Shown: positions 1-46,935 of the stretch, in pieces | Position numbering within the stretch: position 1 is the first letter of the stretch | Layout: the number at the start of each line of letters is the position of its first letter | NCBI RefSeq assembly: GCF_032444005.1 | Contig: NC_091286.1 | Span: 19,344,001 to 19,408,000 of the forward strand | Direction: 5' to 3' | DNA: 64,000 nt | DNA from: Ranitomeya imitator | Taxonomy: Eukaryota | Program-made: the position numbers and the translations under genes | Notes under the pieces: model-generated | The model's database searches: none | What the model was told of the DNA's origin: nothing | Seen by the model: only the letters and a program-made list of their open reading frames with translations

Positions 1-458
1 CTAGCTCCTCCTTCCATCTAGCTCCTCCCTCCTTCTAACTCCTCCCTCCTAGCTCCTCCCTTATATATCCTCCCTCCTTATAACTCTTCCCTTCTTCTAG
101 CTCCTCCCTCCTTCTAGCTCCTCCCTCCTTCTAGCTCCTCCCTCCTTCTAACACCTCCCTCCTTCTAGCTCCCCCTCCTTCTAGCTACTTCCTCCTTCTA
201 ACTCCTCCCACCTTCTAGCTCCTCCCTGATTCTAGCTCCTCCCTCCTAACACCTCCCTCCTTCTAACTCCTCCCTCCTAGCTCCCCCTCCTTCTAGCTCC
301 TCCCTCCTAACTCCTCCCTTCTTCTAGCTCCTCCCTCCTAACTCCTCCCTCCGTCTAACACCTCCCTCCGTCTAACACCTCCCTCTTTCTAACACCTCCC
401 TCCTTCTAACACCTCCCTCCTTCTAGCTCCTCCCTCCTTCGAACTCCTCCCTCCTTCG
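1..458. repeat. Pyrimidine-rich minisatellite, ~17 bp unit (CTAGCTCCTCCCTCCTT), truncated by window start
   Basis: Repeated ctagctcctccctcctt / ctaacacctccctcc variants from base 1 to ~458. Confidence 0.95.
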
Positions 459-488
459 TAGAATTTTAAAAGCACCAACTGCCATTTC

Positions 489-612
489 CTATCTCAGGAA
501 AGGGAAAGTCTGTTTTCTCTGAATTCAGATTTTACAGATTTTACCTGCAAATTTAGAGTGAACGATCCGTCCAGGAGGAGAAAGAAGCAGATTTCTCTGA
601 TAAGATCTATCA
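489..612 (+). promoter_or_regulatory. Candidate erythroid promoter remnant: three WGATAR sites upstream of the globin-like ATG
   Basis: CTATCT 489-494, TGATAA 598-603, CTATCA 607-612, ~80-200 bp upstream of ATG 691. Short motifs, so could be chance. Confidence 0.35.
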
Positions 613-690
613 CAACGTTTCTTATTTTCATGAGTACTATTGATTCATTAAAGATGAAGATGTTGGCTCACTGGTTAGTCCCTCATCCAC

Positions 691-782
691 ATGGTGGGAT
701 TATTTTGGGCTGTGAAACGCTTTGTGCAGTTGCAAGATGGCAGCATAATGCAGGAGAATGGGGTCCCATGGAGACCCCGACG
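691..782 (+). pseudogene. Globin-like exon 1 (degraded)
   Basis: ccacATGGTG start; gca gga gaa tgg ggt (AGEWG) at 750-764 in a shifted frame; donor CG|GTACGG at 782/783; 92 nt from ATG to donor. Confidence 0.5.
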
Positions 783-951
783 GTACGGCGACAAACAAGT
801 CCCAAAAAGTCGGAGCTAGTTAGATTTTGTGGTGACTTAGTTGCTGTGGTCATGGTACCCTAAGGGTCAATGTGGCCCCATTCACCTGCATTACACTGCG
901 ATGTGGCAGCAGTATAAAGAGACCTTTGGCGGCACGACCTGTGTATTCCAG

Positions 952-1129
952 CTCCGCACATGTGGCCCCCAACGTGGCACAGCACATGGAATGGAGACAT
1001 AGAGGTCCTATCTCAGCTAATGGACAGGCACGGCCCAAAGATCAGTATTCTCCAACTAGTGGTGAAACGGCAACTCACAGCACACCAGGACAGCCGCAGC
1101 AGAGCTTCAAGGGTCCGCCCCGGACACCG
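952..1129 (+). pseudogene. Globin-like exon 2 (degraded)
   Basis: Acceptor tgtattccAG ends 951. The frame containing codon 1029-1031 reads WPPTWHSTWNGDIEVLSQLMDRHGPKI...LTAHQDSRSRASRVRPGH, aligning to alpha-type YPxT...DLSxGSAQxxxHGxKV...LSALSDLHAYxLRVDPGN. Donor CCG|GTAACC at 1129/1130. About 25 nt shorter than a normal alpha exon 2. Confidence 0.58.
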
Positions 1130-1144
1130 GTAACCTTATATATG

Positions 1145-4100
1145 CCCCGACTGTATCAGTGCTGACCCCTGATTGTATCAGTGCTGACCCCCAATTGTAT
1201 CAGTGCTGACCCCCGACTGTATCAGTGCTGACCCCCGACTGTATCAGTGCTGACCCCCCATGGTATCAGTGCTGACCCCCAATTGTATCAGTGCTGACCC
1301 CCGACTGTATCAGTGCTGACCCCCGATTGTATCAGTGCTGACCCCTGATTGTATCAGTGCTGACCCCCCGATTGTATCAGTGCTGACCCCCGACTGTATC
1401 AGTGCTGACCCCCGATTGTATCAGTGCTGACCCCCCGATTGTATCAGTGCTGACCCCCCGATTGTATCAGTGCTGACCCCGATTGTATCAGTGCTGACCC
1501 CCCGATTGTATCAGTGCTGAGCCACCCGATTGTATCAGTGCTGAGCCCCCGACTGTATCAGTGCTGACCTCCGATTGTATCAGTGCTGACCCCCCGATTG
1601 TATCAGTGCTGAGCCCCCGATTGTATCAGTGCTGACCCCCCGATTGTATCAGTGCTGAGCCCCCATTGTATCAGTGCTGAGCCCCCGATTGTATCAGTGC
1701 TGAGCCCCCATTGTATCATTGCTGAGCCCCCAACTGTATCAGGGCTGACCCCTGATCGTATCAGTGCTGACCCCGATTGTATCAGTGCTGAGCCCCCGAC
1801 TGTATCAGTGCTGACCCCTGATTGTATCTGTGCTGACCCCCCAAAGTATCAGTGCTGACCCCCAGATCATATCAGTGCTGACCCCCCGATTGTATCAGTG
1901 CTGACCCCCCGACTGTATCTGTGCTGACCCCCCATAGTATCAGTGCTGAGCCCCCGACTGTATCAGTGCTGACCCCTGATTGTATCTGTGCTGACCCCCC
2001 ATAGTATCAGTGCTGACCCCCGATCATATCAGTGCTGACCCCCCGATTGTATCAGTGCTGACCCCCCGACTGTATCTGTGCTGACCCCCCATAGTATCAG
2101 TGCTGAGCCCCCGACTGTATCAGTGCTGACCCCCGATTGTATCAGTGCTGACCCCCCGACTGTATCTGTGCTGACCCCCCATAGTATCAGTGCTGAGCCC
2201 CCGACTGTATCAGTGCTGACCCCTGATTGTATCTGTGCTGACCCCCCATAGTATCAGTGCTGACCCCCGATCATATCAGTGCTGACCCCCCGATTGTATC
2301 AGTGCTGACCCCCCGACTGTATCTGTGCTGACCCCCCATAGTATCAGTGCTGAGCCCCCGACTGTATCAGTGCTGACCCCCGATTGTATCAGTGCTGACC
2401 CCCCGACTGTATCAGTGCTGACCCCCCCCGACTGTATCAGTGTTGACCCCTGATTGTATCAGTGCTGACCCCCCATTGTATCAGTGCTGACACCCGATTG
2501 TATCAGTGCTGACCCCCCACTGTATCAGTGCAGACCCCTGATTGTATCAGTGCTGACCCCCGATTGCATCAGTGCAGACCCCCGATTGTATCAGTGCTGA
2601 CCCCCCATTGTATCAGTGCAGACCCCTGATTGTATCAGTGCTGACCCCCGATTGTATCAGTGCTGACCCCCGATTGTATCAGTGCAGACCCCTGATTGTA
2701 TCAGTGCTGACCCCCGATTGTATCAGTGCAGACCCCTGATTGTATCAGTGCTGACCCCCGATTGTATCAGTGCAGACCCCTGATTGTATCAGTGCAGACC
2801 CCTGATTGTATCAGTGCTGACCCCCGATTGCATCAGTGCAGACCCCCGATTGTATCAGTGCTGACCCCCCATTGTATCAGTGCTGATCCCCGATTGTATC
2901 AGTGCTGACCCCCGATTGTATCAGTGCTGACCCCCGATTGTATCAGTGTTGACCCCCCGATTGTATCAGTGCTGACCCCTGATTGTATCAGTGCTGACCC
3001 CTGATTGTATCAGTGCTGACCCCCCGATTGTATCAGTGCAGACCCCTGATTGTATCAGTGCTGACCCCCCGATTGTATCAGTGCTGAGCCCCCATTGTAT
3101 CAGTGCTGAGCCCCCGATTGTATCAGTGCTGAGCCCCCATTGTATCATTGCTGAGCCCCCAACTGTATCAGGGCTGACCCCTGATCGTATCAGTGCTGAC
3201 CCCGATTGTATCAGTGCTGAGCCCCCGACTGTATCAGTGCTGACCCCTGATTGTATCTGTGCTGACCCCCCAAAGTATCAGTGCTGACCCCCAGATCATA
3301 TCAGTGCTGACCCCCCGATTGTATCAGTGCTGACCCCCCGACTGTATCTGTGCTGACCCCCCATAGTATCAGTGCTGAGCCCCCGACTGTATCAGTGCTG
3401 ACCCCTGATTGTATCTGTGCTGACCCCCCATAGTATCAGTGCTGACCCCCGATCATATCAGTGCTGACCCCCCGATTGTATCAGTGCTGACCCCCCGACT
3501 GTATCTGTGCTGACCCCCCATAGTATCAGTGCTGAGCCCCCGACTGTATCAGTGCTGACCCCCGATTGTATCAGTGCTGACCCCCCGACTGTATCTGTGC
3601 TGACCCCCCATAGTATCAGTGCTGAGCCCCCGACTGTATCAGTGCTGACCCCTGATTGTATCTGTGCTGACCCCCCATAGTATCAGTGCTGACCCCCGAT
3701 CATATCAGTGCTGACCCCCCGATTGTATCAGTGCTGACCCCCCGACTGTATCTGTGCTGACCCCCCATAGTATCAGTGCTGAGCCCCCGACTGTATCAGT
3801 GCTGACCCCCGATTGTATCAGTGCTGACCCCCCGACTGTATCAGTGCTGACCCCCCCCGACTGTATCAGTGTTGACCCCTGATTGTATCAGTGCTGACCC
3901 CCCATTGTATCAGTGCTGACACCCGATTGTATCAGTGCTGACCCCCCACTGTATCAGTGCAGACCCCTGATTGTATCAGTGCTGACCCCCGATTGCATCA
4001 GTGCAGACCCCCGATTGTATCAGTGCTGACCCCCCATTGTATCAGTGCAGACCCCTGATTGTATCAGTGCTGACCCCCGATTGTATCAGTGCTGACCCCC

Positions 4101-6700
4101 GATTGTATCAGTGCAGACCCCTGATTGTATCAGTGCTGACCCCCGATTGTATCAGTGCAGACCCCTGATTGTATCAGTGCTGACCCCCGATTGTATCAGT
4201 GCAGACCCCTGATTGTATCAGTGCAGACCCCTGATTGTATCAGTGCTGACCCCCGATTGCATCAGTGCAGACCCCCGATTGTATCAGTGCTGACCCCCCA
4301 TTGTATCAGTGCTGATCCCCGATTGTATCAGTGCTGACCCCCGATTGTATCAGTGCTGACCCCCGATTGTATCAGTGTTGACCCCCCGATTGTATCAGTG
4401 CTGACCCCTGATTGTATCAGTGCTGACCCCTGATTGTATCAGTGCTGACCCCCCGATTGTATCAGTGCAGACCCCTGATTGTATCAGTGCTGACCCCTAA
4501 GTGTATCAGTGCTGACCCCCGATTGTATCAGTGCAGACCCCCGATTGTATCAGTGCTGACCCCTGATTGTATCAGTGCTGACCCCCGATTGTATCAGTGC
4601 TGACCCCCCGATTGTATCAGTGCTGACCCCCGATTGTATCAGTGCTGACCCCTGATTGTATCAGTGCTGACCCCCGATTGTATCAGTGCTGACCCCCCGA
4701 TTGTATCAGTGCTGACCCCTGATTGTATCAGTGCTGACCCCCCGATTGTATCAGTGCTGACCCCTGATTGTATCAGTGCTGACCCCCGATTGTATCAGTG
4801 CTGACCCCCCGATTGTATCAGTGCTGACCCCCGATTGTATCAGTGCTGACCCCCGATTGTATCAGTGCTGACCCCCGATTGTATCAGTGCAGACCCCCGA
4901 TTGTATCAGTGCTGACCCCCGATTGTATCAGTGCTGACCCCCCGATTGTATCAGTGCTGAACCCTAAGTGTATCAGTGCTGACCCCCCGATTGTATCAGT
5001 GCTGACACCCGATTGTATCAGTGCTGAGCCCCCGACTGTATCAGTGCTGACCCCCCGACTGTATCAGTGTTGACCCCCGATTGTATCAGTGCTGACCCCC
5101 CGATTGTATCAGTGCTGACCCCTGATTGTATCAGTGCAGACCCCCGATTGTATCAGTGCTGACCCCTGATTGTATCAGTGCTGACCCCCCGATTGTATCA
5201 GTGCTGACCCCCGATTGTATCAGTGCTGACCCCCGACTGTATCAGTGCTGACCCCCGATTGTATCAGTGCTGACCCCCGACTGTATCAGTGCTGACCCCC
5301 CGATCGTATCAGTGCTGACCCCCGACTGTATCAGTGCTGACCCCCCGATCGTATCAGTGCTGACCCCCCGATCGTATCAGTGCTGACCCCTGATTGTATC
5401 AGTGCTGACCCCCGATTGTATCAGTGCTGACCCCCGATTGTATCAGTGCTGACCCCCGATTGTATCAGTGCAGACCCCCGATTGTATCAGTGCTGACCCC
5501 TGATTGTATCAGTGCTGACCCCCGATTGTATCAGTGCTGACCCCTGATTGTATCAGTGCTGACCCCCGATTGTATCAGTGCTGACCCCCGATTGTATCAG
5601 TGCAGACCCCCGATTGTATCAGTGCTGACCCCTGATTGTATCAGTGCTGACCCCCGATTGTATCAGTGCTGACCCCCCGATTGTATCAGTGCTGAACCCT
5701 AAGTGTATCAGTGCTGACCCCCGATTGTATCAGTGCTGACCCCTGATTGTATCAGTGCAGACCCCCGATTGTATCAGTGCTGACCCCTGATTGTATCAGT
5801 GCTGACCCCCCGATTGTATCAGTGCTGACCCCCGACTGTATCAGTGCTGACCCCCGATTGTATCAGTGCTGACCCCCGACTGTATCAGTGCTGACCCCCC
5901 GATCGTATCAGTGCTGACCCCCCGATCGTATCAGTGCTGACCCCTGATCGTATCAGTGCTGACCCCCGATTGTATCAGTGCTGACCCCCGATTGTATCAG
6001 TGCTGACCCCCGACTGTATCAGTGCTGACCCCCGATTGTATCAGTGCTGACCCCCGATTGTATCAGTGCTGACCCCCGATTGTATCAGTGCAGACCCCCG
6101 ATTGTATCAGTGCTGACCCCTGATTGTATCAGTGCTGACCCCTGATTGTATCAGTGCTGACCCCCGATTGTATCAGTGCTGACCCCTGATTGTATCAGTG
6201 CTGACCCCCGATTGTATCAGTGCTGACCCCCCGATTGTATCAGTGCTGAACCCTAAGTGTATCAGTGCTGACCCCCGATTGTATCAGTGCTGACCCCTGA
6301 TTGTATCAGTGCAGACCCCCGATTGTATCAGTGCTGACCCCTGATTGTATCAGTGCTGACCCCCCGATTGTATCAGTGCTGACCCCCGATTGTATCAGTG
6401 CTGACCCCCGATTGTATCAGTGCTGACCCCCCGATTGTATCAGTGCTGACCCCCGATTGTATCAGTGCTGACCCCCCATTGTATCAGTGCTGACCCCCGA
6501 TTGTATCAGTGCTGACCCCCGACTGTATCAGTGCTGACCCCCGATCGTATCAGTGCTGACCCCCGACTGTATCAGTGCTGACCCCCGATCGTATCAGTGC
6601 TGACCCCCGACTGTATCAGTGCTGACCCCCCGATTGTATCAGTGCTGACCCCCGATTGTATCAGTGCTGACCCCCGATTGTATCAGTGCTGACCCCCGAT
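1145..6700. repeat. Large minisatellite (~5.55 kb, ~260 copies of 21-22 bp GCTGACCCC(C)CGATTGTATCAGT) filling globin intron 2
   Basis: Directly visible tandem array with variable C-run length and diagnostic variant units. Confidence 0.99.
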
Positions 6701-6714
6701 CTTCTTCCTTCCAG

Positions 6715-6828
6715 CTCCTCGGAGCCGCCATCCAGGAGGTTCTCGCCGCTCGTTATCCCGCAGACTTCCACCAAGCCGCCTGGGAGAAGTTCCTTAACGA
6801 GGCTTCTGGAATCATGGTCACCGGCTAA
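6715..6828 (+). CDS. Globin exon 3 (G-H helices): LLGAAIQEVLAARYPADFHQAAWEKFLNEASGIMVTG*
   Basis: Polypyrimidine acceptor cttcttccttcCAG ends 6714. Phase-0 start at LL, as in Hb exon 3. Resembles LLSHxIQVxLAxHFPxEFxxxxHAAWDKFL, with a ~3-residue gap at the GH/H start and no terminal Tyr. TAA at 6826-6828. Confidence 0.85.
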   Translation, partial: LLGAAIQEVLAARYPADFHQAAWEKFLNEASGIMVTG

Positions 6829-7026
6829 TCTCTGAAGACCCCGCTGGGATATTGGTCCAAGTCACGACGTCGTCTGTCCGATCCTTAGATTCTCCATCCT
6901 GACCCGGTGACCCCCCATCCACAGAGTAACCTGCCGAGGACTTACCCCCTGCGTCCTCCTGTTAGAGACTCCTGAGCCGGAATAAGCAAGGGTTAATTAT
7001 TAATGTACTTTGTTTTTTTGTTGAAA

Positions 7027-7032
7027 AATAAA
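7027..7032 (+). terminator. Candidate poly(A) signal AATAAA of the globin-like gene
   Basis: AATAAA ~200 nt after the stop codon. Confidence 0.45.
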
Positions 7033-12256: not shown

Positions 12257-13980
12257 AGGGTCCTCAGCCTGTCCAGGTGAGTTCCTGTGTGATCCCAGGT
12301 GAGCTGATCACCTAGAAGGGCCCATTACTCCTTATATAAGAGTGATCGTTGGGTGGTGAAGGATCTGTGGTCTTCAGGGAAGTGCTGAGATTGACAAGGA
12401 CAATGTCTGGGGTGAAGAACACCATCCGTCTTCTTGTAGACCCTGCAAAGAAAGACTCCATCGGCCTGACTTACATCGTCTGTGTTATTCTGGAAGGTTT
12501 GGCCGGAATTTCCAAATCTGAGGTTTTTTGCTTGCAGGATTCTCCCAGGCGTGGTCTGTATGATATCACCTTCCACCATGGAAGTAGTTGTCTTAGTTTC
12601 CTTGCCTGTCTGAAAAGCCACAAGAGGAAGTCCGTTTTGGAGCACATCAAGTTTTTCCCACTCTTTGGGATGCGAGAGAGGCCCATGATCGTGCACATGT
12701 TCAACCCTCACGCTGACATTGAGGTGGTGATGACCTACCTGGAACAATACTGCGATTCTGTACGTGGCGGCGTCAAGCAGCGGAATGTCTTTGGTATCTT
12801 TAATGGGAAGTATAAGTTGTGGGTCTGTCTGAAGTTTGAGCCGCTCTATACGTCTGGCATAAAGCACCCTCCAGCAAACTTCTCCATTGCGGGTAATCAA
12901 GGTTTTCTGATGTATCATGGGCAGCCGAGCTCCCACAAGAAGCTCCAACCCTCTGGCTATTGTCCTTTTGAGAAGATATGTCGTAGCTGTGGACAGCTAT
13001 CTCATGATGGTGGTGACCCTAACGAATGCGATATATGTGGACTGGTGGGGAATCTAAGACTTAATGGTGAGCAAGAAACCATGATGGAACATGAGACTTC
13101 AATGGAGGATGAGACCCCAGAAGCCCACCCTACTAAGATAAGCAGACATGATGGTGCACTGGTGACTGTTGCAGGAAGGGAAACCACCGCTAACTGAGGA
13201 CCTGATCGATGATGGGGATGGTTTATCCTTCAGGTAGGAATATGCTTCTCCATATGTAGGAGGGATGAGAGGCGGCCAATGCAAGAGTTATGGTTGGCAG
13301 ATAGAGGTGAGCGTGTTCTGATCTGTTATATCAAGAAGTTGTGACAAACTTGTTTATTTAGAAGCCTAGGAAGTAATCTGGATAAGTCTTCTAATGGGTC
13401 AATGGGGGGGTTCTGACTTAGTTGACTTGATATTTGGGCCTGAGCTGGTCTAAAGATGCTGCTGAACTGTGCGGTTTCAGTCTTGCACTATTGTTTTTTT
13501 ATTTATTTTTTTACTTTATTTTTCTGACTCCACATAGAAGCCTCCCAAGAAAAGGGAAAAAAAAAAAAAACCTGCAGAAACTAATCTCTCCTATAAGATA
13601 AATAGCAGCTTTACATCTGCACCAGAAACTTGTCAAATAAGTGGTGGCCTTAAACAAAAAAAAAAAAAAAGAAAAAAAAAAAATACATACTGTTTGGAGG
13701 TGATCCTGTATGGGGGGCACCGGCGGGCTGATGGTCTATGTGCTGGTAACTGAGGGTGAGCGATGGCGCTGACATCTTGTACATTTTGTCTCCTTAGAGT
13801 CCTTCACGTAAAGTTCCCTCAAGAATGGAAGAGCTGGAGAATCTCTGGGGTTCTGACAGATGATAAAAAAAATTTACTGATTATTTTTTGCGTTATTTAC
13901 TTTTATGATAAAATGTTTTGATTTTAATTTTCAACATTCAGCTTGTAACTTGGTGATTTTTGTCTTTAAAAATAAAAACC
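12257..13980 (+). mobile_element. Internally deleted L1/Tx1-clade non-LTR retrotransposon (ORF1 retained, ORF2 essentially absent)
   Basis: ORF1-like protein followed by T-rich 3' sequence ending in AATAAAAA ~13971-13978; boundaries approximate. Confidence 0.55.
12349..13197 (+). CDS. Tx1/L1-type ORF1 (ZCCHC3-like nucleic-acid-binding protein), partly degenerate zinc knuckles
   Basis: 282 aa ORF with family-like motifs: VFCLQD...YDITF, VHMFNP, FGIFNGKY, HPPANFSIAGNQGFLMYHGQP, CRSCGQLSH. Confidence 0.75.
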   Translation: MGGEGSVVFREVLRLTRTMSGVKNTIRLLVDPAKKDSIGLTYIVCVILEGLAGISKSEVFCLQDSPRRGLYDITFHHGSSCLSFLACLKSHKRKSVLEHIKFFPLFGMRERPMIVHMFNPHADIEVVMTYLEQYCDSVRGGVKQRNVFGIFNGKYKLWVCLKFEPLYTSGIKHPPANFSIAGNQGFLMYHGQPSSHKKLQPSGYCPFEKICRSCGQLSHDGGDPNECDICGLVGNLRLNGEQETMMEHETSMEDETPEAHPTKISRHDGALVTVAGRETTAN

Positions 13981-16249: not shown

Positions 16250-17829
16250 CAGGTCCTTCTCAAAAAATTAGCATATAGTGTTAAATTTCATTATTTACCA
16301 TAATGTAATGATTACAATTAAACTTTCATATATTATAGATTCATTATCCACCAACTGAAATTTGTCAGGTCTTTTATTGTTTTAATACTGATGATTTTGG
16401 CATACAACTCCTGATAACCCAAAAAACCTGTCTCAATAAATTAGCATATCAAGAAAAGGTTCTCTAAACGACCTATTACCCTAATCTTCTGAATCAACTA
16501 ATTAACTCTAAACACATGCAAAAGATACCTGAGGCTTTAATAAACTCCCTGCCTGGTTCATTACTCAAAACCCCCATCATGGGTAAGACTAGCGACCTGA
16601 CAGATGTCAAGAAGGCCATCATTGACACCCTCAAGCAAGAGGGTAAGACCCAGAAAGAAATTTCTCAACAAATAGGCTGTTCCCAGAGTGCTGTATCAAG
16701 GCACCTCAATGGTAAGTCTGTTGGAAGGAAACAATGTGGCAGAAAACGCTGTACAACGAGAAGAGGAGACCGGACCCTGAGGAAGATTGTGGAGAAGGAG
16801 CGATTCCAGACCTTGGGGAACCTGAGGAAGCAGTGGACTGAGTCTGGTGTGGAAACATCCAGAGCCACCGTGCACAGGCGTGTGCAGGAAATGGGCTACA
16901 GGTGCCGCATTCCCCAGGTAAAGCCACTTTTGAGCTACAGAGAAGCAGCACTGGACTGTTGATAAGTGGTCCCAAGTACTTTTTTCTGATGAAAGCAAAT
17001 TTTGCATGTCATTCGGAAATCAAGGTGCCAGAGTCTGGAGGAAGACTGGGGAGAAGGAAATGCCAAAATGCCTGAAGTCCAGTGTCAAGTACCCACAGTC
17101 AGTGATGGTGTGGGGTGCCATGTCAGCTGCTGGTGTTGGTCCACTGTGTTTCATCAAGGGCAGGGTCAATGCAGCTAGCTATCAGGAGATTTTGGAGCAC
17201 TTCATGCTTCCATCGGCTGAAATGCTTTATGGAGATGAAGATTTCATTTTTCAGCACGACCTGGCACCTGCTCACAGTGCCAAAACCACTGGTAAATGGT
17301 TTACTGACCATGGTATTACTGTGCTCAATTGGCCTGCCAACTCTCCTGACCTGAACCCCATAGAGAATCTGTGGGATATTGTGAAGAGAAAGTTGAGAGA
17401 CGCAAGACCCAACACTCTGGATGAGCTTAAGGCCACTATTGAAGCATCCTGGGCCTCCATAACATCTCAGCAGTGTCACAGGCTGATTGCCTCCATGCCA
17501 CGCCGCATTGAAGCAGTCATTTCTGCCAAAGGATTCCCCACCAAGTATTGAGTGCATAACTGAACATTATTATTTGATGGTTTTTTTGTTTGTAATTAAA
17601 AAACACTTTTATTTGATTGGATGGGTGAAATATGCTAATTTATTGAGACAGGTTTTTTGGGTTATCAGGAGTTGTATGCCAAAATCATCAGTATTAAAAC
17701 AATAAAAGAGCTGACAAATTTCAGTTGGTGGATAATGAATCTATAATATATGAAAGTTTAATTGTAATCATTACATTATGGTAAATAATGAAATTTAACA
17801 CTATATGCTAATTTTTTGAGAAGGACCTG
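16250..17829 (+). mobile_element. Tc1 transposon, IR/DR type, ~200 bp TIRs, TA TSD
   Basis: TA|CAGGTCCTTCTCAAAAAATTAGCATAT ... ATATGCTAATTTTTTGAGAAGGACCTG|TA. TIRs nearly identical (one mismatch seen). Repeat AAATTAGCATAT at outer and inner TIR ends. Confidence 0.97.
16579..17551 (+). pseudogene. Tc1 transposase (DD34E), frameshifted near 16933
   Basis: MGKTSDLTD...HTH region, then in the second frame WSQVLFSDESKF, FQHDLAPAH, WPANSPDLNPIENLW; 34 residues between second D and E. Confidence 0.93.
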
Positions 17830-19156: not shown

Positions 19157-22100
19157 ATGGCCGAAAAGGACCTTCCACAGTTCCCCAATGCTGAAACAGA
19201 GCAAATACAACCTGATACTGTCCATTATGAAGACCAGGAAGCGGAGCCCGCTTCCACAGCAGACCCAGATGCACGACCAGTACGTTCCATCAAGCCAACA
19301 TTAAAGGTCCTCGAGAATTACTGTTCCACAAGGGATGAGTTCAATGACAACTTGGACGACCTATGGGAACGAGTCGCCTCCCTTATGTCAAGCGTCCAAC
19401 GCCATAAAAATGATGCAGCGGGTTTACAGGACACTATAAGACAGCTAGACGTGGCCCACGGCAGATACAAGAGACTGTCCACAAAGTATGCTGCCTTCCT
19501 AAAAGAATCTAAAATCGACGAAGCCCTATCAGAGTTAAGCAAGGCAGATTCCACAGACAGAGAAAGGGACGCCGCCGTGCAAGACGCCAAAGATAAAGCG
19601 GAGCTTCGTATCACCCATCTGCAAGAAACTAGATCGCACAGGTCAGCCTCGTCTAAACACTCTGCTCGGTCATACAAATCATCCTGCTCAAGAACTTCAG
19701 CCCTCAGCGACAGAATCCTAGAGGCCCGTTTAAATGCAGAGCGGTCGAAACTAAGACGTTCATACACCGAAAAGAAAGCAGAAGCAGAGGCTCGAGCAAA
19801 GATTCTTCAAACAGAAGCAGAAGCGAAGAGAGCAGAAGCAGAGGCTCGAGCAAAGATTCTTCAAACAGAAGCAGAAGCGAAGAGAGCAGAAGCAGAGGCT
19901 CGAGCAAAGATTCTTCAAACAGAAGCAGAAGCGAAGAGAGCAGAAGCAGAGGCTCGAGCAAAGATTCTTCAAACAGAAGCAGAGGCTCAAGCAAGGATTC
20001 TTCAAACAGAAATGGAGGAAGAAATTGCATTAGCCGAAGTAAAAATACTCGAGCAAGCATTGAAGCAAAACCTCGACCCAATTTGCCTGCCACCACAGGA
20101 AGAAGATGACCCAGCTGTTCGTACCAGAGACTACGTGCAGAAACAGATACCTGCAGCGCACACCTTCTCCAGTGACGTTCAACCCAACATTGCGGAAACG
20201 TCCAAGTCAGCCCAACCTATGGTGCCAGTATCGCCCACAGCCCCTACAGAGACCCAAGACCAACGCCGTGATGTACCCCCTCAGGAGCAATCATCATCGC
20301 AAGACGACCACAAGGCACACTCCAGCCCGCCTCCACAGTTCAAGCAGCAGTCATCGGAATCTCTAGAGGTTAAACCACAGCTCAACCCTGCAGCGACATC
20401 ATTCTACCCGGGAACAATTCACCTTTCCACGCCACACAGCTTATACGCCCGAGGGGCACCACAAGCTAATATGGTAACAAGGAGTGAAGGATCAGACATG
20501 TCCGAGTTTGCCAGGTTCATGGTGAGCAGGGAGCTAATCAGCACTAGCCTCTCAAAATTCGACGACCGTGCAGAGAACTACAGAGCCTGGAAAGCAACCT
20601 TCAAGGCTGCCATTGCTGATCTCAACCTATCCGTGGAGCAGGAGCTCGACCTCATGGTAAAATGGTTGGGTCCTGAATCCACAAACCGTATCAAGAGTCT
20701 TAGGACCGTCTATGTGGGGCAAGCTGAAGCAGGTCTCGCTGCTGCCTGGCAGAGACTCGAAAGAACCTACGGCAGCGCTGAAGCCATAGAAAAGTCCCTA
20801 TTCAAGAGACTGCAGAACGTTCCAAGGATCAACCTTAAGGAAGCCCACAAGCTTCTGGACTTAAGTGATCTGCTTATGGAGCTGGAACTTGCTAAAAGAG
20901 ACCCTCGTCTGTCATGACTGTGCTACCTGGACACTGCCCATGGGGTGAACCCAATCGTCTCAAAGCTGCTACATAGTCTGCAAGAGAAGTGGGCAGTGTG
21001 TGTCTCCAGGTATAAAAGGTCACATGACGTCACCTTTCCTCCGTTCATTCAGTTCTGCAAGTTCATTGACGAACAAGCCCAAATGAGGAACGACCCTAGC
21101 CTCGACTTCCTGGAGTCTAACACTGCAGCTCCAGCAACACCTTCATCAAGGTATGAAAGCGTCGCACATAGACGCAAGGACTCAAGGAACAGTGTAAGCA
21201 TCAGAAAGACTAACCTGCCATCACCTGCAGTACCTGCCGACAAGCAGTACACTATTCCGTCGAGGGATAAGTCTTTCAATCGTGAGTGTCCCATTCACAA
21301 AAAACCACACTCACTGAACAAATGTAGAGGCTTCAGGTCCAAAACCATGCAGGAGCGCAAGAAAATCCTCAACGAACTTGGGGTATGTTTCAAGTGCTGC
21401 GCTTCATCAGAACACATGGCCAAGGACTGTAAATCTGCCATTAAGTGTGAAGTGTCATAGCGACAGACACCCATCAGCCTTGCACCCAGGCTCAGCCACC
21501 AGCGATCCAGCAGTCGCAGTTACCTCTGGTCCCGCTACAAACCATGGCGGGGAGCCACAGAATCACGCCAAGTCCACCACAGCTGTGTCCTGCTCATGCT
21601 CAGAGGTATGTGGGGAGAATCAAAGTGCTAAATGCTGTGCCAGGATATGCCTAATCAGAGTCTATCCAGAAGGGCAACCAGAGAAGGCTGTAAAAATGTA
21701 TGCCATCATTGACGATCAGAGCAATCGATCCCTAGCTGGACCTAAGTTCTTTGAAGCCTTTAGAATCAAGGGACCAGCAACGCCCTACACTCTGAATACT
21801 TGCTCGGGGCGCATAGAGACTAGCGGCAGAAGAGCACAAGGTTTCATCGCTTCTCCTGTCAATGAAGACGTAGAAATACCCCTAACTACGCTAATTGAAT
21901 GCGATCAAATACCAGACCAAAGGGATGAGATCCCTACCCCAGAAGCTGCTTTCCACCAACCACACTTAAGGCACCTAGCCAGCGTTATCCCACCTTTGGA
22001 CACAGATGCTGAAATCCTACTTCTGCTCGGCAGAGACAATTTGAGGATACATAAGGTCCGCCAACAGTGTAATGGTCCTGACTACGCCCCCTACGCCCAG

Positions 22101-24305
22101 AGACTTGACTTGGGGTGGGTAGTCATAGGAAATGTATGCTTGGACCAAACAGGAGTCCACTCCTTTAAGACGTACGTACGCCGAGACGGGCGCACTACCT
22201 TCTGCAAACCATGTCCTCATCACTATGAGGTGAAGGAAAAGCTTCCAGATTCCGTAGAGCTGCCTGATGTTATCCCTTCTCCCTATGCAGACGACTTGGG
22301 AAAATTGGTGTTTCATACCACTAAGGATGACAACAAAGTAGCCCCATCTATGGAAGACAAGGAATTTGTCAGGATAATGGACAATGAGTTCCTTAAGGAC
22401 GAAACCAATCACTGGGTTTTCCCCTTACCCTTCCGAGCTACCAGGGTAAGGCTCCCGAACAATCGTGAACAAGCCTTGTCCAGATTTAACTCTCTCCAGC
22501 GCACGCTAAGCAATAAACCGGAGATGAAAGAACACATTGTCACCTTTATGGGCAAAATATTCCATAACAACCATGTGGAGCCAGCGTCTCCCTTAAAGGA
22601 AAACGAGGAGTGCTGGTACCTACCCTCATTTGGAGTATATCACCCGAAGAAACCTAAACAAATTAGAGTTGTCTTTGATTCAAGCGCCAAACATCAAGGC
22701 GTATCTCTCAATGATGTCCTCCTCACAGGTCCTAATCTGACAAACAACTTAGTAGGAGTGTTGATGAGGTTCAGGAAAGAGCCCATTGCCATCACCGCCG
22801 ACATTGAACAGATGTTCCACTGTTTCATAGTCCGAGAGGACCACAGGAATTTCCTCAGGTTCCTGTGGTACAAGGACAATGACCCCAGCAAAGAGATGGT
22901 GGAGTATCGCATGCGGGTGCACGTATTCGGGAACAGCCCTTCACCCGCTGTGGCAACATATGGCCTGCGGAGAACCGCACAAGAAGGAGAGTCCGAGTAT
23001 GGAACAGACGCCAGAGACTTTGTAGAGAAAGACTTCTACGTAGATGATGGACTAAAATCTCTACCTACAGAAGAAGCTGCAATCGACCTACTCAAAAGGA
23101 CCCAACATATGCTGTACCGAGCTAAGCTTAGACTGCACAAAATTGCTTCAAACAGCCCGGCTGTCATGAGAGCCTTTGAGTCAAGCGACCACGCACCTGG
23201 ATTCAAGGACATAGACCTGGGACCAGACCGTCCGCCTGTGCAGAGAAGCTTAGGCCTGAGGTGGAACCTGTCAGCCGACACCTTCGGATTCCAAATCAAC
23301 TGTGCAGACAAACCATTCACTAAACGTGGTGTCCTGTCAGTGGTAAATAGCCTGTATGACCCACTGGGATTCGTAGCACCAATTACCATACAAGGTAAAT
23401 CCCTTCTGAGACAGTTGTCCGAAACTGTCAAGGACTGGGATACCCCTCTACCTCCTGATAAGGAACCAAAATGGGAAACCTGGAAGCAGTCTTTGTGTGC
23501 CTTGGATAAAATCCATATACCGAGATGCTACGCTGGAATCTCACTTGCTGCTAGCACCAGGACGGAACTCCATGTGTTCTCGGATGCATCCACGGAGGCC
23601 ATTGCAGCTGTTGTCTACCTGAAGGTAACGGGATCTGACAATCAAGATCATGTTGGGTTCGTTTTCGGCAAAGCTAAGTTGGCTCCCAAGCCTGACCACA
23701 CTATTCCCAGGCTGGAACTCTGTGGGGCTGTGCTTGCAGTAGAACTCGCAGACTTTATTCAGCATGAGCTGGACACTCACATAGATGACGTACAATACTA
23801 CAGTGACAGTAAAGTTGTCTTAGGTTACATCTACAACCAAACAAGGCGCTTCTACATGTACGTCAGTAACCGCATTGAGAGAATAAGAAGGTCTTCCAAA
23901 CCTGAACAGTGGCACTATATCCCATCTGAACTTAATCCAGCCGACCATGCCACTAGACCTATGTCTATAAATTCCTTTGCTAACTCTTCTTGGCTTTCAG
24001 GTCCAAAGTTTCTGCTGGAACAGAAGGGAAGTGAATGTGTTCAGGAAGTCTTCAGCATCCAGGATCCGGACGATGATCCAGAAGTCCGCTCCGAGGTCAG
24101 TGCTCTGGCCACGAACGCTAAACCAACCTCCTCCCTCGGTTGCCAGTGCTTCAAACGCTTCTCCAATTGGATGAAACTCATTAAGACTATTGCAAGGTTA
24201 GTCCACATTGCGAGATCTTATCACAAGCCACATGGAGACAAAGACTGTCATGGTTGGCACGTCTGCCAAAAAATACTCACTATCGAGGACATTCCGGTAG
24301 GATAA
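19157..24305 (+). pseudogene. BEL/Pao gag-pol polyprotein, disrupted
   Basis: Gag with zinc knuckles (CPIHKKPHSLNKC, CFKCCASSEHMAKDC), protease YAIIDDQS, RT FYVDDGL, RNase H HVFSDAS / KAKLAP. In-frame TGA at 20915-20917, frameshift ~21450, truncation after RNase H. Confidence 0.93.
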
Positions 24306-26785: not shown

Positions 26786-29700
26786 TAACATAGTAACATA
26801 GTTAGTAAGGCCGAAAAAAGACATTTGTCCATCCAGTTCAGCCTATATTCCGTCATAATAAATCCCCAGATCTACGTCCTTTTACAGAACCTAATAATTG
26901 TATGATACAATATTGTTCTGCTCCAGGAAGACATCCAGGCCTCTCTTGAACCCCTCGACTGAGTTCGCCATCACCACCTCCTCAGGCAAGCAATTCCAGA
27001 TTCTCACTGCCCTAACAGTAAAGAATCCTCTTCTATGTTGGTGGAAAAACCTTCTCTCCTCCAGACGCAAAGAATGCCCCCTTGTGCCCGTCACCTTCCT
27101 TGGTATAAACAGATCCTCAGCGAGATATTTGTATTGTCCCCTTATATACTTATACATGGTTATTAGATCGCCCCTCAGTCGTCTTTTTTCTAGACTAAAT
27201 AATCCTAATTTCGCTAATCTATCTGGGTATTGTAGTTCTCCCATCCCCTTTATTAATTTTGTTGCCTCCTTTGTACTCTCTCTAGTTCCATTATATCCTT
27301 CCTGAGCACCGGTGCCCAAAACTGGACACAGTACTCCATGTGCGGTCTAACTAGGGATTTGTACAGAGGCAGTATAATGCTCTCATCATGTGTATCCAGA
27401 CCTCTTTTAATGCACCCCATGATCCTGTTTGCCTTGGCAGCTGCTGCCTGGCACTGGCTGCTCCAGGTAAGTTTATCATTAACTAGGATCCCCAAGTCCT
27501 TCTCCCTGTCAGATTTACCCAGTGGTTTCCCGTTCAGTGTGTAATGGTGATATTGATTCCCTCTTCCCATGTGTATAACCTTACATTTATCATTGTTAAA
27601 CCTCATCTGCCACCTTTCAGCCCAAGTTTCCAACTTATCCAGATCCATCTGTAGCAGAATACTATCTTCTCTTGTATTAACTGCTTTACATAGTTTTGTA
27701 TCATCTGCAAATATCGATATTTTACTGTGTAAACCTTCTACCAGATCATTAATGAATATGTTGAAGAGAACAGGTCCCAATACTGACCCCTGCGGTACCC
27801 CACTGGTCACAGCGACCCAGTTAGAGACTATACCATTTATAACCACCCTCTGCTTTCTATCACTAAGCCAGTTACTAACCCATTTACACACATTTTCCCC
27901 CAGACCAAGCATTCTCATTTTGTGTACCAACCTCTTGTGCGGCACGGTATCAAACGCTTTGGAAAAATCGAGATATACCACGTCCAATGACTCACCGTGG
28001 TCCAGCCTATAGCTTACCTCTTCATAAAAACTGATTAGATTGGTTTGACAGGAGCGATTTCTCATAAACCCATGCTGATATGGAGTTAAACAGTTATTCT
28101 CATTGAGATAATCCAGAATAACATCCCTCAGAAACCCTTCACATATTTTACCAACAATAGAGGTTAGACTTACTGGCCTATAATTTCCAGGTTCACTTTT
28201 AGAGCCCTTTTTGAATATTGGCACCACATTTGCTATGCGCCAATCCTGCGGAACAGACCCTGTCGCTATAGAGTCACTAAAAATAAGAAATAATGGTTTA
28301 TCTATTACATTACTTAGTTCTCTTAGTACTCGTGGGTGTATGCCATCCGGACCCGGAGATTTATCTATTTTAATCTTATTTAGCCGGTTTCGCACCTCTT
28401 CTTGGGTTAGATTGGTGACCCTTAATATAGGGTTTTCATTGTTTCTTGGGATTTCACCTAGCATTTCATTTTCCACCGTGAATACCGTGGAGAAGAAGGT
28501 GTTTAATATGTTAGCTTTTTCCTCGTCATCTACAACCATTCTTTCCTCACTATTTTTTAAGGGGCCTACATTTTCAGTTTTTATTCTTTTACTATTGATA
28601 TAGTTGAAGAACAGTTTGGGATTAGTTTTACTCTCCTTAGCAATGTGCTTCTCTGTTTCCTTTTTGGCAGCTTTAATTAGTTTTTTAGATAAAGTATTTT
28701 TCTCCCTATAGTTTTTTAGAGCTTCAATGGTGCCATCCTGCTTTAGTAGTGCAAATGCTTTCTTTTTACTGTTAATTGCCTGTCTTACTTCTTTGTTTAG
28801 CCACATTGGGTTTTTCCTATTTCTAGTCCTTTTATTCCCACAAGGTATAAACCGCTTACACTGCCTATTTAGGATGTTCTTAAACATTTCCCATTTATTA
28901 TCTGTATTCTTATTTCTGAGGATATTGTCCCAGTCTACCAGATTAAGGGCATCTCTAAGCTGTTCAAACTTTGCCTTCCTAAAGTTCAGTGTTTTTGTGA
29001 CTCCCTGACAAGTCCCCCTAGTGAAAGACAGGTGAAACTGCACAATATTGTGGTCGCTATTTCCTAGATGCCCAACCACCTGCAGATTTGTTATTCTGTC
29101 AGGTCTATTAGATAGTATTAGGTCTAAAAGTGCTGCTCCTCTGGTTGGATTCTGCACCAATTGTGAAAGATAATTTTTCTTGGTTATTAGCAGAAACCTG
29201 TTGCCTTTATGGGTTTCACAGGTTTCTGTTTCCCAGTTAATATCCGGGTAGTTAAAGTCCCCCATAACCAGGACCTCATTATGGGTTGCAGCTTCATCTA
29301 TCTGCTTTAGAAGTAGACTTTCCATGCTTTCTGTTATATTTGGGGGTTTGTAACAGACCCCAATGAGAATTTTGTTACCATTTTTCCCTCCATGAATTTC
29401 AACCCATATGGACTCGACATCTTCATTCCCTTCGCTAATATCCTCCCTTAAAGTGGACTTTAGACAAGACTTTACATAGAGACAAACCCCTCCTCCTCTC
29501 CGATTTTTACGATCCTTTCTAAACAGACTGTAACCCTGTAAGTTAACTGCCCAGTCATAGCTTTCATCTAACCATGTCTCGGTTATTCCCACTATGTCAA
29601 AGTTACCTGTAGATATTTCTGCTTCTAGTTCTTCCATCTTGTTTGTCAGGCTTCTGGCGTTTGCGAGCATGCAGTTTAGAGGATTTTGTTTTGTTCCAAT

Positions 29701-29818
29701 CTCCTCACTGTGGATTGTTTTAGAAATGTTCTTACCTCCCTTCTGAGTATGTTTTCCTGGGTCGTCTTTGTACGAGTCTAATGTTTTTCTTCCCGTCCCC
29801 TCTTCTTCTAGTTTAAAG
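26786..29818 (-). mobile_element. CR1 LINE, 5'-truncated, with complete 3' end
   Basis: APE+RT ORF2 on the minus strand; 3' tail (CTATGTTA)n, seen as taacatagtaacatagt at ~26786-26802. Confidence 0.95.
26891..29667 (-). pseudogene. CR1 ORF2 (AP endonuclease + reverse transcriptase), one apparent 1-nt frameshift near 27266
   Basis: MLANARSL, GITETW, MGDFNYPDINW, SDHN, PGPDGIHP, YLDFSKAFD, GVPQGSVLGP, FADD; C-terminus continues in a second frame (ATKLIKG...GLFSLEKRRLRGD). Confidence 0.93.
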
Positions 29819-30009
29819 TGTGTCTTTCCGAGGTGTAGCATTGGCTACTGTGGGGGGTCATCCTCAACAATTTAGGTTGAAAAAGTGACTGTTGGATTTA
29901 CCAAGTGGAGACTCTTATCCCAGTAGGTCTGAATGCAGATTGTTAAATGGAATCTTTTCTGAAAAACAATTACTTGGTTATTATATGTAAATATTTTGAG
30001 ATTTTCTTA

Positions 30010-45729: not shown

Positions 45730-46935
45730 ATCTGCAAAAACCCTAGTCCACGCCCTCATCATCTCTCGCCTTGACTACTGTAACCTCCTGCTCTGTGGCC
45801 TCCCCTCTAACACTCTCGCATCCCTCCAATCTATTCTAAACTCTGCTGCCCGACTAATCCACCTGTCCCCCCGCTATTCCCCAGTCTCTCCCCTCTGTCA
45901 ATCCCTTCACTGGCTCCCCATTACCCAGAGACTCCACTACAAAACCCTAACCATGACGTACAAAGCCATCCACAACCTGTCTCCTCCATACATCTGTGAC
46001 CTCGTCTCCCGGTACTTACCTACACACAACCTCCGATCCTCACAAGATCTCCATCTCTACTCCCCTCTTATCTCCTCTTCCCACAATCGCATACAAGATT
46101 TCTTTCGCGTATCACCCTTACTCTGGAACTCTCTACCACAACACATCAGACTCTCGCCTACCATCGAAACCTTCAAAAAGAACCTGAAGACCGACCTCTT
46201 CCGACAAGCCTACAACCTGCAGTAACCACCGATCGACCAAACCACTGCACGACCAGCTCTACCCTCATCTACTGTATCCTCACCCATCCCTTGTAGATTG
46301 TGAGCCCTCGCGGGCAGGGTCCTCTCTCCTCCTGTATCCTCACCCATCCCTTGTAGATTGTGAGCCCTCGCGGGCAGGGTCCTCACTCCTCCTGTATCCT
46401 CACCCATCCCTTGTAGATTGTGAGCCCTCGCGGGCAGGGTCCTCACTCCTCCTGTATCCTCACCCATCCCTTGTAGATTGTGAGCCCTCGCGGGCAGGGT
46501 CCTCTCTCCTCCTGTATCCTCACCCATCCCTTGTAGATTGTGAGCCCTCGTGGGCAGGGTCCTCTTTCCTCCTGTATCCTCACCCATCCCTTGTAGATTG
46601 TGAGCCCTCACGGGCAGGGTCCTCTCTCCTCCTGAATCCTCACCCATCCCTTGTAGATTGTGTGCCCTCGTGGGCAGGGTCCTCTCTCCTCCTGAATCCT
46701 CACCCATCCCTTGTAGATTGTGAGCCCTCACGGGCAGGGTCCTCTCTCCTCCTGTATCCTCACCCATCCCTTGTAGATTGTGAGCCCTCGCGGGCAGGGT
46801 CCTCTCTCCTCCTGTACCAGTTATGACTTGTATTGTTTAAGATTATTGTACTTGTTTTTATTATGTATACCTCTCCTCACATGTAAAGCGCCATGGAATA
46901 AATGGCGCCATAATGATAAATAAAAATAATAATAA
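45730..46935 (+). mobile_element. L2 LINE 3' end (ORF2 C-terminus + 3' UTR)
   Basis: LVHALIISRLDYCNLLL.GLP...LHWLP...FKKNLKT.LF ending at 46225; tail tgtaaagcgccatggaataaatggcgc...aataataa. Confidence 0.92.
46273..46815 (+). repeat. 60-bp unit x9 tandem array within the L2 3' UTR
   Basis: TGTATCCTCACCCATCCCTTGTAGATTGTGAGCCCTCGCGGGCAGGGTCCTCTCTCCTCC repeated with exact 60-bp period. Confidence 0.98.

What the first reader, a model, noticed from the sequence alone, without database searches (positions are those of the whole stretch)
691..6828. Hidden three-exon alpha-like globin gene missed by the ORF track
Seen in sequence: exon 3 (6715-6828) is a clean globin G-H segment behind a good acceptor. 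Upstream, AGEWG (750-764), WPPT, D..S..HGPKI (His at 1029) and LTAHQDSRSRASRVRPGH occur in globin order. GT-AG introns lie at 783-951 and 1130-6714. Established knowledge: vertebrate globins have introns at B12.2 (splitting Arg) and G7.0, and alpha chains lack the D helix (Pro to distal His = 21 residues); all three match here. Inference: an alpha-like gene that has lost CD1 Phe, the proximal His F8 (codon reads CGC), part of the EF corner, ~3 residues at the GH corner and the C-terminal Tyr. It is therefore a pseudogene or a non-heme derivative, and the window probably borders a frog globin cluster.
Basis: partly seen in the sequence, partly recalled or inferred. Interest (0 to 1): 0.75.

Follow-up and report, generated by a model that had tools for sequence, protein, structure and literature searches.

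The report
Lone alpha-like globin last exon

Summary
Exon 3 (6715-6828, + strand) holds up. It has a pyrimidine-rich acceptor. Its 37 codons match the Pfam Globin profile over the G-H helices (E 0.028, below Pfam's cut-off) and human zeta-globin 105-137 (E 0.0023, 15 of 30 aligned residues identical). The exon starts exactly at the canonical intron-2 position, ends in TAA, and is followed by AATAAA 199 nt later.

The proposed exons 1-2 (691-1129) do not hold up. The cited motifs exist, but all lie in genomic frame 0. The stated ATG, the split Arg and the phase-0 junction into exon 3 belong to other frames. No frame of 458-1144 matches a globin in Pfam or PDB at E<=10. AGEWG lies in one arm of a 200-bp foldback. 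GT-AG open-frame models are common here: 45 exist, and 39% of simulated segments give at least one.

The stretch 1145-6700 is one 22-bp minisatellite (about 249 copies) with no hidden unique island. No other globin motif or exon-3 copy occurs in the 64 kb, which is rich in transposons.

Most likely this is the terminal exon of an alpha/zeta-like globin gene or pseudogene whose exons 1-2, if they exist, lie upstream of the window. The stop falls at the Tyr HC2 position and three GH-corner residues are missing, which leans towards a pseudogene.

No RNA data or orthologue could be obtained. The scan's index holds no separate globin note for this genome.

The parts
6715..6828 (+). Terminal coding exon (37 codons plus TAA) of an alpha/zeta-like globin. 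It covers the G helix, a shortened GH corner and the H helix.
   Evidence: Translation. Pfam Globin E 0.028, profile positions 83-114 of 117. PDB phmmer against human zeta-globin 105-137, E 0.0023, 15 of 30 identical, with a 3-residue gap. AlphaFold gives two helices, 2-13 and 20-31, pLDDT 85.8. The top Foldseek row is zeta-globin, but not significant.
6701..6714 (+). Splice acceptor: a 12-nt all-pyrimidine tract followed by AG. The intron is phase 0 and sits at the canonical globin intron-2 position, before the Leu-Leu that opens exon 3.
   Evidence: Sequence. The register follows from the zeta alignment: query residue 5 aligns to chain residue 105, so residue 1 aligns to chain residue 101, which is Leu100 of the mature chain.
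6829..7032 (+). Putative 3' UTR ending in the only AATAAA (7027-7032) found within about 570 nt downstream of the stop. GC falls from 0.60 in the exon to 0.49 in the UTR and 0.43 beyond it.
1145..6700 (+). A 22-bp minisatellite (consensus CCCCGATTGTATCAGTGCTGAC) of about 249 copies that abuts the acceptor tract. It has no unique island inside and contains a 1,429-bp higher-order duplication.
   Evidence: TRF. Spacing of core copies.
458..1144 (.). No protein similarity was found in any frame, and it is best read as intronic or intergenic DNA.
   Evidence: no globin. (no homologue of the two long open frames, 836-1162 and 462-860).
720..919 (.). Imperfect 200-bp foldback, with arms at 720-772 and 867-919. 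The AGEWG string lies in the left arm, and its near mirror image NAGEWGH reads on the opposite strand of the right arm.
   Evidence: the repeat finder: 53-nt arms, 75% complementary. Self reverse-complement blastn: 69.5% over 210 nt. DNA fold -42.1 kcal/mol, z = -4.0. Reverse-frame translation.
1..457 (.). A 17-bp tandem array (about 28 copies) at the window edge, upstream of the unique segment.

Best explanation
6715-6828 is the third and last coding exon of an alpha-type (zeta/pi-like) globin gene or pseudogene on the + strand of a frog genome. It keeps the canonical phase-0 acceptor in front of the Leu-Leu that opens the G-helix exon. It encodes the G and H helices, stops at TAA, and is followed by a polyadenylation signal about 200 nt later.

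The intron upstream of it carries a 5.5-kb 22-bp minisatellite that runs right up to the acceptor's pyrimidine tract. The DNA at 691-1129 is not globin exons 1-2. It is non-coding sequence that includes a foldback repeat. The true exons 1 and 2, if they still exist, lie upstream of the window start, so intron 2 would be longer than 6.7 kb.

Shown: the exon's globin similarity, its splice register, the stop and the AATAAA. Inferred: the stop sits where Tyr HC2 should be, and together with the 3-residue GH deletion this makes a conventional haemoglobin subunit unlikely. On that basis I judge a decaying or already dead copy somewhat more likely than a working gene.
For: Exon 3 matches Pfam Globin at the correct C-terminal profile positions. 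Its only PDB hits at E<=10 are zeta-globin, E 0.0023. The alignment register puts the exon start exactly at the conserved intron-2 site (with the sequence). The acceptor, stop and AATAAA are in place. Two helices are predicted with pLDDT 85.8, and zeta-globin is the top Foldseek row, with about half of the weak rows also globins.

For 458-1144, Pfam and PDB searches of every frame and piece find no globin. A foldback covers AGEWG. The minisatellite holds no hidden exon.

Uniform-decay argument (inference): exon 3 is still 50% identical to a human globin. A neighbouring exon 2, normally the best conserved exon, should therefore be easy to recognise if it were present.
Against: The Pfam score is below the gathering threshold, and Foldseek is not significant; 37 residues cannot give more. 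No orthologue, transcript or upstream sequence was available, so it is not shown that exons 1-2 exist at all. An HG.K[VI] string occurs only 7 times in the six frames of the 64 kb. One of these lies here on the right strand, 21 residues after a Pro. That frame could reach exon 3 in phase through a weak donor (AGG|GTCCGC at 1113). A very decayed exon 2 is therefore not strictly excluded. Misassembly across the 5.5-kb array cannot be excluded either.
Confidence: 0.6

Rival explanations
1. Solitary relic. Only exon 3 of an alpha-like globin survives at this place, as a partial duplicate or as the remnant of a gene whose exons 1-2 were deleted or displaced when the tandem arrays expanded. It is not transcribed as a globin.
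For: No exon 1-2 signal anywhere in the window. Tandem arrays lie on the upstream side. The stop falls at the Tyr HC2 position and there is a GH deletion. The surroundings are rich in transposons.
Against: The exon is open, keeps a strong acceptor and an AATAAA, and keeps the hydrophobic helix pattern. Only 6.7 kb of upstream sequence is visible, and introns in a large frog genome can be longer than that.
Confidence: 0.25
2. A complete but badly degenerate three-exon alpha-like gene lies at 691-6828 (exons 691-782, 952-1129, 6715-6828). It is a pseudogene or a non-haem derivative, and its intron 2 consists almost entirely of the minisatellite.
For: GT-AG dinucleotides are present at the stated sites. 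With ATG 691 the three pieces give an uninterrupted 127-codon frame with phase-2 and phase-0 junctions. HGPKI lies 21 residues after a Pro. The array starts 15 nt after the GT at 1130.
Against: The open frame and the globin-like strings are in different frames. No globin hit in any frame at E<=10. There are 45 alternative GT-AG open models in the same 687 nt, and 39% of simulated segments give at least one. AGEWG is half of a foldback. Exon 2 would have decayed beyond recognition while exon 3 stayed 50% identical to human zeta.
Confidence: 0.07
3. The exon belongs to another globin type linked to the frog alpha-beta cluster, either GbY or a beta-like gene, and not to an alpha-like gene.
For: GbY lies next to the frog alpha-beta cluster and has long introns in platypus (PMC2529266). 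The exon opens with Leu-Leu-Gly and has Gln-Ala-Ala before the Trp, as beta chains do (my own knowledge of beta-globin). It also lacks the Hb-type C-terminal Tyr.
Against: The only PDB hits are zeta-globin. The ...AAR.PADF... and AAW.KFL blocks are alpha/zeta signatures. GbY is longer (154-156 aa), not shorter. No GbY sequence could be compared here.
Confidence: 0.12
4. Chance resemblance: 6715-6828 is not globin-derived at all.
For: The Pfam score is below threshold. E 0.0023 holds for one 37-aa query. Scaled to the six-frame content of 64 kb, several hits of that strength to some PDB protein would be expected.
Against: The hit is to the predicted family, in the correct part of the profile. 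It starts exactly at an AG behind a 12-nt pyrimidine tract at the family's conserved intron site. It ends within two codons of the family's C-terminus and is followed by AATAAA. The joint chance is very small, about 1e-6 by my rough estimate.
Confidence: 0.03

Closest known systems
Embryonic/larval alpha-like globins (human zeta-globin HBZ, PDB 3w4u/1jeb; their frog larval alpha counterparts)
   Same: Exon 3 starts at the same intron-2 position. It is 15 of 30 identical to zeta 105-137, including the AAR.PADF and AAW.KFL blocks. It has the same helix-turn-helix.
   Different: Three residues are missing at the GH corner. The stop codon falls where Tyr HC2 should be, so Tyr-Arg is absent. The G helix carries Gln-Glu where zeta has Leu-Val. 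No exon 1-2 is in view.
Globin pseudogenes and partial copies in vertebrate alpha clusters (for example psi-zeta and psi-alpha; from my own knowledge)
   Same: A globin-derived exon with recognisable splice signals but features that do not fit a working Hb chain, in a repeat-rich setting.
   Different: No frameshift or internal stop in the one exon seen, so pseudogene status is inferred, not shown.
Tandem repeats inside human zeta-globin introns and the alpha-cluster hypervariable minisatellites (from my own knowledge; not checked in a paper here)
   Same: A short-unit tandem array sits inside an intron of an alpha-like globin gene.
   Different: This array is far larger (5.5 kb, about 249 copies of 22 bp), abuts the acceptor, and shows a 1,429-bp higher-order duplication.
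Globin Y (GbY)
   Same: Linked to the frog alpha-beta cluster, and has long introns in platypus (PMC2529266).

Membership tests
Globin (Pfam PF00042) | Sequence match to the family profile at or above the curated threshold | tested here: inconclusive
   Exon 3 alone scores 15.4 bits, E 0.028, against a cut-off of 22, at profile positions 83-114 of 117. A 37-residue fragment can hardly reach the cut-off. PDB phmmer gives zeta-globin at E 0.0023.
Globin (Pfam PF00042) | Haem-pocket residues in exon 2: CD1 Phe, distal His E7, proximal His F8 | tested here: not met
No frame of 458-1144 matches a globin. No DP.NF, G.EAL.R or P.T..YF motif occurs anywhere in the window.
Vertebrate globin gene structure | Intron 2 at G7.0 (phase 0, before the Leu that opens exon 3) | tested here: met
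   AG at 6713-6714 behind a 12-nt pyrimidine tract. The register follows from the zeta alignment.
Vertebrate globin gene structure | Intron 1 at B12.2 (phase 2) linking exon 1 and exon 2 in one globin frame | tested here: not met
   The phase-2 'cg|c' junction exists only in the ATG-691 frame, which carries no globin motif. AGEWG and WPPT are in frame 0 and cannot be joined across 783-951.
Globin fold (3-on-3 helical sandwich) | G and H helices forming the C-terminal hairpin | tested here: inconclusive
   AlphaFold gives helices 2-13 and 20-31, pLDDT 85.8. The best Foldseek row is zeta-globin (TMq 0.68, 42% identity) but at E 1.5.
Haemoglobin alpha-type subunit | C-terminal Tyr HC2 and Arg HC3 | tested here: not met
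   Extending the ungapped zeta alignment, TAA (6826-6828) falls at the Tyr position. No Lys-Tyr-Arg occurs in any frame just downstream.
Frog alpha-beta-GbY globin cluster | Synteny with MPG, NPRL3 and LUC7L, and neighbouring globin genes | not tested
   No second globin signal in the window. The flanking markers were not searched systematically. The scan's notes for this genome contain no globin, NPRL3 or LUC7L entry.
Expressed gene | Transcripts with a splice junction into 6715 | not testable with these tools

The most novel reading that the evidence does not exclude
Exon 3 is spliced and translated as part of a truncated or chimeric product: either a non-haem alpha-globin derivative, or the frame-consistent 127-codon ORF from ATG 691. 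Its last intron would consist almost entirely of about 250 tandem copies of a branch-point-like 22-mer. That would be a natural test case for how the spliceosome copes with hundreds of competing branch sites.
Probability: 0.06. Interest if true: 0.55.

Novelty: new member of a known kind. Interest (0 to 1): 0.2.

Why it matters
It matters little beyond annotation. The exon marks a position in or near the frog alpha-like globin region and flags an unannotated, divergent alpha/zeta-like copy with no C-terminal Tyr. If the upstream exons prove intact and the gene is expressed, it would be an unusual haemoglobin-type chain. It would lack the C-terminal residues that stabilise the deoxy (T) state, and it would have a giant minisatellite intron. 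If not, it is one more globin pseudogene fragment. The case also shows how short motifs drawn from different reading frames can simulate a gene model.

Tried and rejected
1. Exhaustive phmmer of the 37-aa exon against 1.84 billion representatives returned only two repeat-protein artefacts. The query is too short for that library, so the result says nothing about relatives.

2. Word-index searches found nothing: the stop-to-stop ORF around exon 3 (6649-6825, 59 aa) and the two long open frames in the upstream segment (836-1162; 462-860). Because of the length window, full-length globins could never be candidates for the exon query.

3. The ESM Atlas gave sub-threshold acetate-kinase fragments, which I take as chance.

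With the 59-aa ORF it gave one contig, L001, that matches only the repeat-encoded part; I take this as spurious.

6. Each piece was searched separately by reference.

8. Rfam found nothing in the window.

9. Searching the scan's notes for globin, NPRL3 and LUC7L found nothing.
Full report
**What is in the sequence.** GT lies at 783 and 1130, and AG at 950-951 and 6713-6714. AGEWG is at 750-764, WPPT at 963-974, HGPKI has its His codon at 1029, and the LTAHQ...RPGH string ends at 1127. Between 1145 and 6700 there is a single 22-bp tandem array of about 249 copies with 89% matches. Positions 1-457 are a separate 17-bp array. The 22-bp array has no unique island. The largest gap between exact core copies is 135 nt, so no exon hides inside it. 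A block starting near 1623 recurs 1,429 bp further on, which is a higher-order duplication.

**Exon 3 is real.** The stretch window:6715-6825:+ translates into 37 open codons followed by TAA.
- It matches Pfam Globin at profile positions 83-114 of 117, the G-H part of the domain. The score is E 0.028 and 15.4 bits, below the 22-bit cut-off, as expected for a fragment this short.
- Against all PDB sequences, the only hits at E<=10 are two entries of human zeta-globin, residues 105-137. The E-value is 0.0023, with 15 of 30 aligned residues identical and a 3-residue gap at the GH corner.
- The alignment register puts the first residue of the exon on the Leu that opens exon 3 of alpha-like globins. 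The AG at 6713-6714, behind a 12-nt all-pyrimidine tract, therefore sits exactly at the conserved phase-0 intron-2 site.
- The only AATAAA found within about 570 nt downstream of the stop lies at 7027, 199 nt after the stop. GC falls from 0.60 in the exon to 0.43 beyond the signal.
- AlphaFold folds the peptide into two helices with pLDDT 85.8. Foldseek finds nothing significant, but its top row is zeta-globin (TMq 0.68, 42% identity), and about half of the 27 weak rows are haemoglobins or myoglobins.

A single E of 0.002 would not survive correction for the whole six-frame window. Its coincidence with the right family, the right profile region, the exact intron site, a stop within two codons of the family's C-terminus and a poly(A) signal makes chance very unlikely. 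This last step is my inference.

**What is odd about exon 3.** Three residues are missing at the GH corner. If the zeta alignment is extended without gaps, the TAA falls where Tyr HC2 should be, so the Tyr-Arg end is missing (with the sequence). From established knowledge of haemoglobin, these residues stabilise the T state. Without them this is not a conventional Hb subunit. The hydrophobic positions of the H helix are kept. One short open exon cannot decide between a working divergent globin and a young pseudogene.

**Exons 1 and 2 as proposed do not stand.**
- *The model mixes frames.* ATG 691 and the 'split Arg' (cg at 781-782 plus c at 952) belong to genomic frame 1. After the 169-nt intron this continues in the 953 frame, which ends flush at 1129 and enters exon 3 in phase. 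That gives 127 open codons. None of the cited globin strings is read in that frame. AGEWG, WPPT, HGPKI and the LTAHQ string are all in genomic frame 0. Read from AGEWG across the 782/952 junction, the frame meets a stop after 16 codons. Read in the WPPT frame, 1129 leaves two extra bases and throws exon 3 out of frame. Only a weak donor, AGG|GTCCGC at 1113, is in phase.
- *No piece shows globin similarity.* The three frames of the proposed exon 2, the AGEWG frame, the ATG-691 frame and every stop-to-stop piece of 50 aa or more in 458-1144, on both strands, give no Globin hit in Pfam at E<=10. They give no globin in PDB at E<=10 either; the best hits are a beta-glucosidase and phosphoglycerate mutases at E of about 1. 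Exon 3, at half the length, does hit.
- *AGEWG lies in a foldback.* It sits in the left arm of an imperfect 200-bp foldback, with arms at 720-772 and 867-919 that are 75% complementary. The self reverse-complement match is 69.5% over 210 nt, and the DNA fold has z = -4.0. The opposite strand of the right arm reads NAGEWGH.
- *A GT-AG open model is cheap here.* The 687-nt segment offers 45 different ATG-GT...AG-GT models that reach exon 3 in phase. In first-order Markov simulations, 39% of segments offer at least one, and 5.7% offer 45 or more.
- *Uneven decay would be needed (inference).* A pseudogene decays evenly. Exon 3 is still 50% identical to a human globin, so exon 2, normally the best conserved exon, should be plainly recognisable if it were at 952-1129.

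The segment also carries two unusually long open frames, 462-860 and 836-1162. Neither has any relative in the word-index searches.

**Context.** The rest of the window is mostly transposon sequence.
- A Tc1/mariner element at 16516-17551.
- A BEL/Pao element at about 19157-24305.
- A LINE endonuclease and reverse-transcriptase ORF on the minus strand at 27253-29841.
- A ZCCHC3-like ORF at 12349-13197.

There is no second copy of exon 3. No canonical exon-1 or exon-2 globin motif appears on either strand. Rfam finds nothing. Earlier notes of this scan call the genome a poison frog; I did not check this. In frogs the cluster is arranged MPG-NPRL3-alpha-beta-GbY-LUC7L, and GbY has kilobase-sized introns in platypus (PMC2529266). 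An alpha-like exon with a long intron therefore fits such a region, but I found no synteny marker here.

**Most likely reading.** This is the terminal exon of an alpha/zeta-like globin gene or pseudogene. The intron before it carries the minisatellite, and exons 1-2, if they exist, lie upstream of the window (confidence about 0.6). The main rival is a solitary exon-3 relic (about 0.25).

**Limits.**
- No vertebrate globin could be obtained by reference. The word-index search only sees proteins 0.55 to 1.75 times the query length. The exhaustive search with a 37-aa query returned only repeat artefacts.
- For those reasons the tblastn, exonerate and phylogeny tests were not run.
- The joined spliced model was neither searched nor folded. 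Each exon was searched separately by reference.
- The sequence upstream of the window cannot be seen.

**Verdict.** This is an ordinary finding. It is a correct spot of a globin last exon, wrapped in a three-exon model that the evidence does not support. The scan's index holds no separate globin note for this genome.

Noticed in passing
window 1145-6700: The 22-bp minisatellite contains a higher-order duplication. The pattern of degenerate units from about 1623 to 2808 recurs exactly 1,429 bp (65 units) downstream. The unit carries a branch-point-like CTGAC, and the array runs to within 14 nt of the acceptor AG.
   Followed up: partly
window 1-457: A 17-bp tandem array (consensus CTAGCTCCTCCCTCCTT, about 28 copies, 81% matches) at the very start of the window.
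   Followed up: no
window 720-919: An imperfect 200-bp foldback (53-nt arms, DNA fold z = -4.0) with no other copy in the window. It may be a MITE-like element.
   Followed up: partly
window 462-1162: Two unusually long open frames on the + strand, 462-860 (133 aa) and 836-1162 (109 aa). They overlap in different frames and have no Pfam, PDB or word-index relative. They could be chance or a decayed unknown ORF.
   Followed up: partly
window 19157-24305: A BEL/Pao-type retrotransposon: a 586-aa ORF with a weak DUF1759 match, followed by a 975-aa ORF with Peptidase_A17 (E 1e-48).
   Followed up: no
window 27253-29841 (-): A LINE ORF2-like 862-aa ORF with endonuclease (Exo_endo_phos) and reverse-transcriptase domains, apparently intact.
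   Followed up: no
window 16516-17551: A Tc1/mariner transposase split into two ORFs, HTH_Tnp_Tc3_2 and DDE_3.
   Followed up: no
window 12349-13197: A 282-aa ORF with both ZCCHC3 RNA-binding domains (E 6e-19 and 4e-12). It may be a retroelement gag-like gene or a ZCCHC3-type gene copy.
   Followed up: no
window 59936-60393: A run of repeated peptide-coding units (IQEEMTYRY-like) at about 33-66 nt spacing on the + strand. It was seen only as repeated weak tblastn rows and is probably another tandem repeat.
   Followed up: no
window 46210-46767 (-): A 185-aa ORF with only low-complexity style Pfam hits (Diapausin, DUF6329; no stretch passes on its own). It is probably repeat-derived.
   Followed up: no
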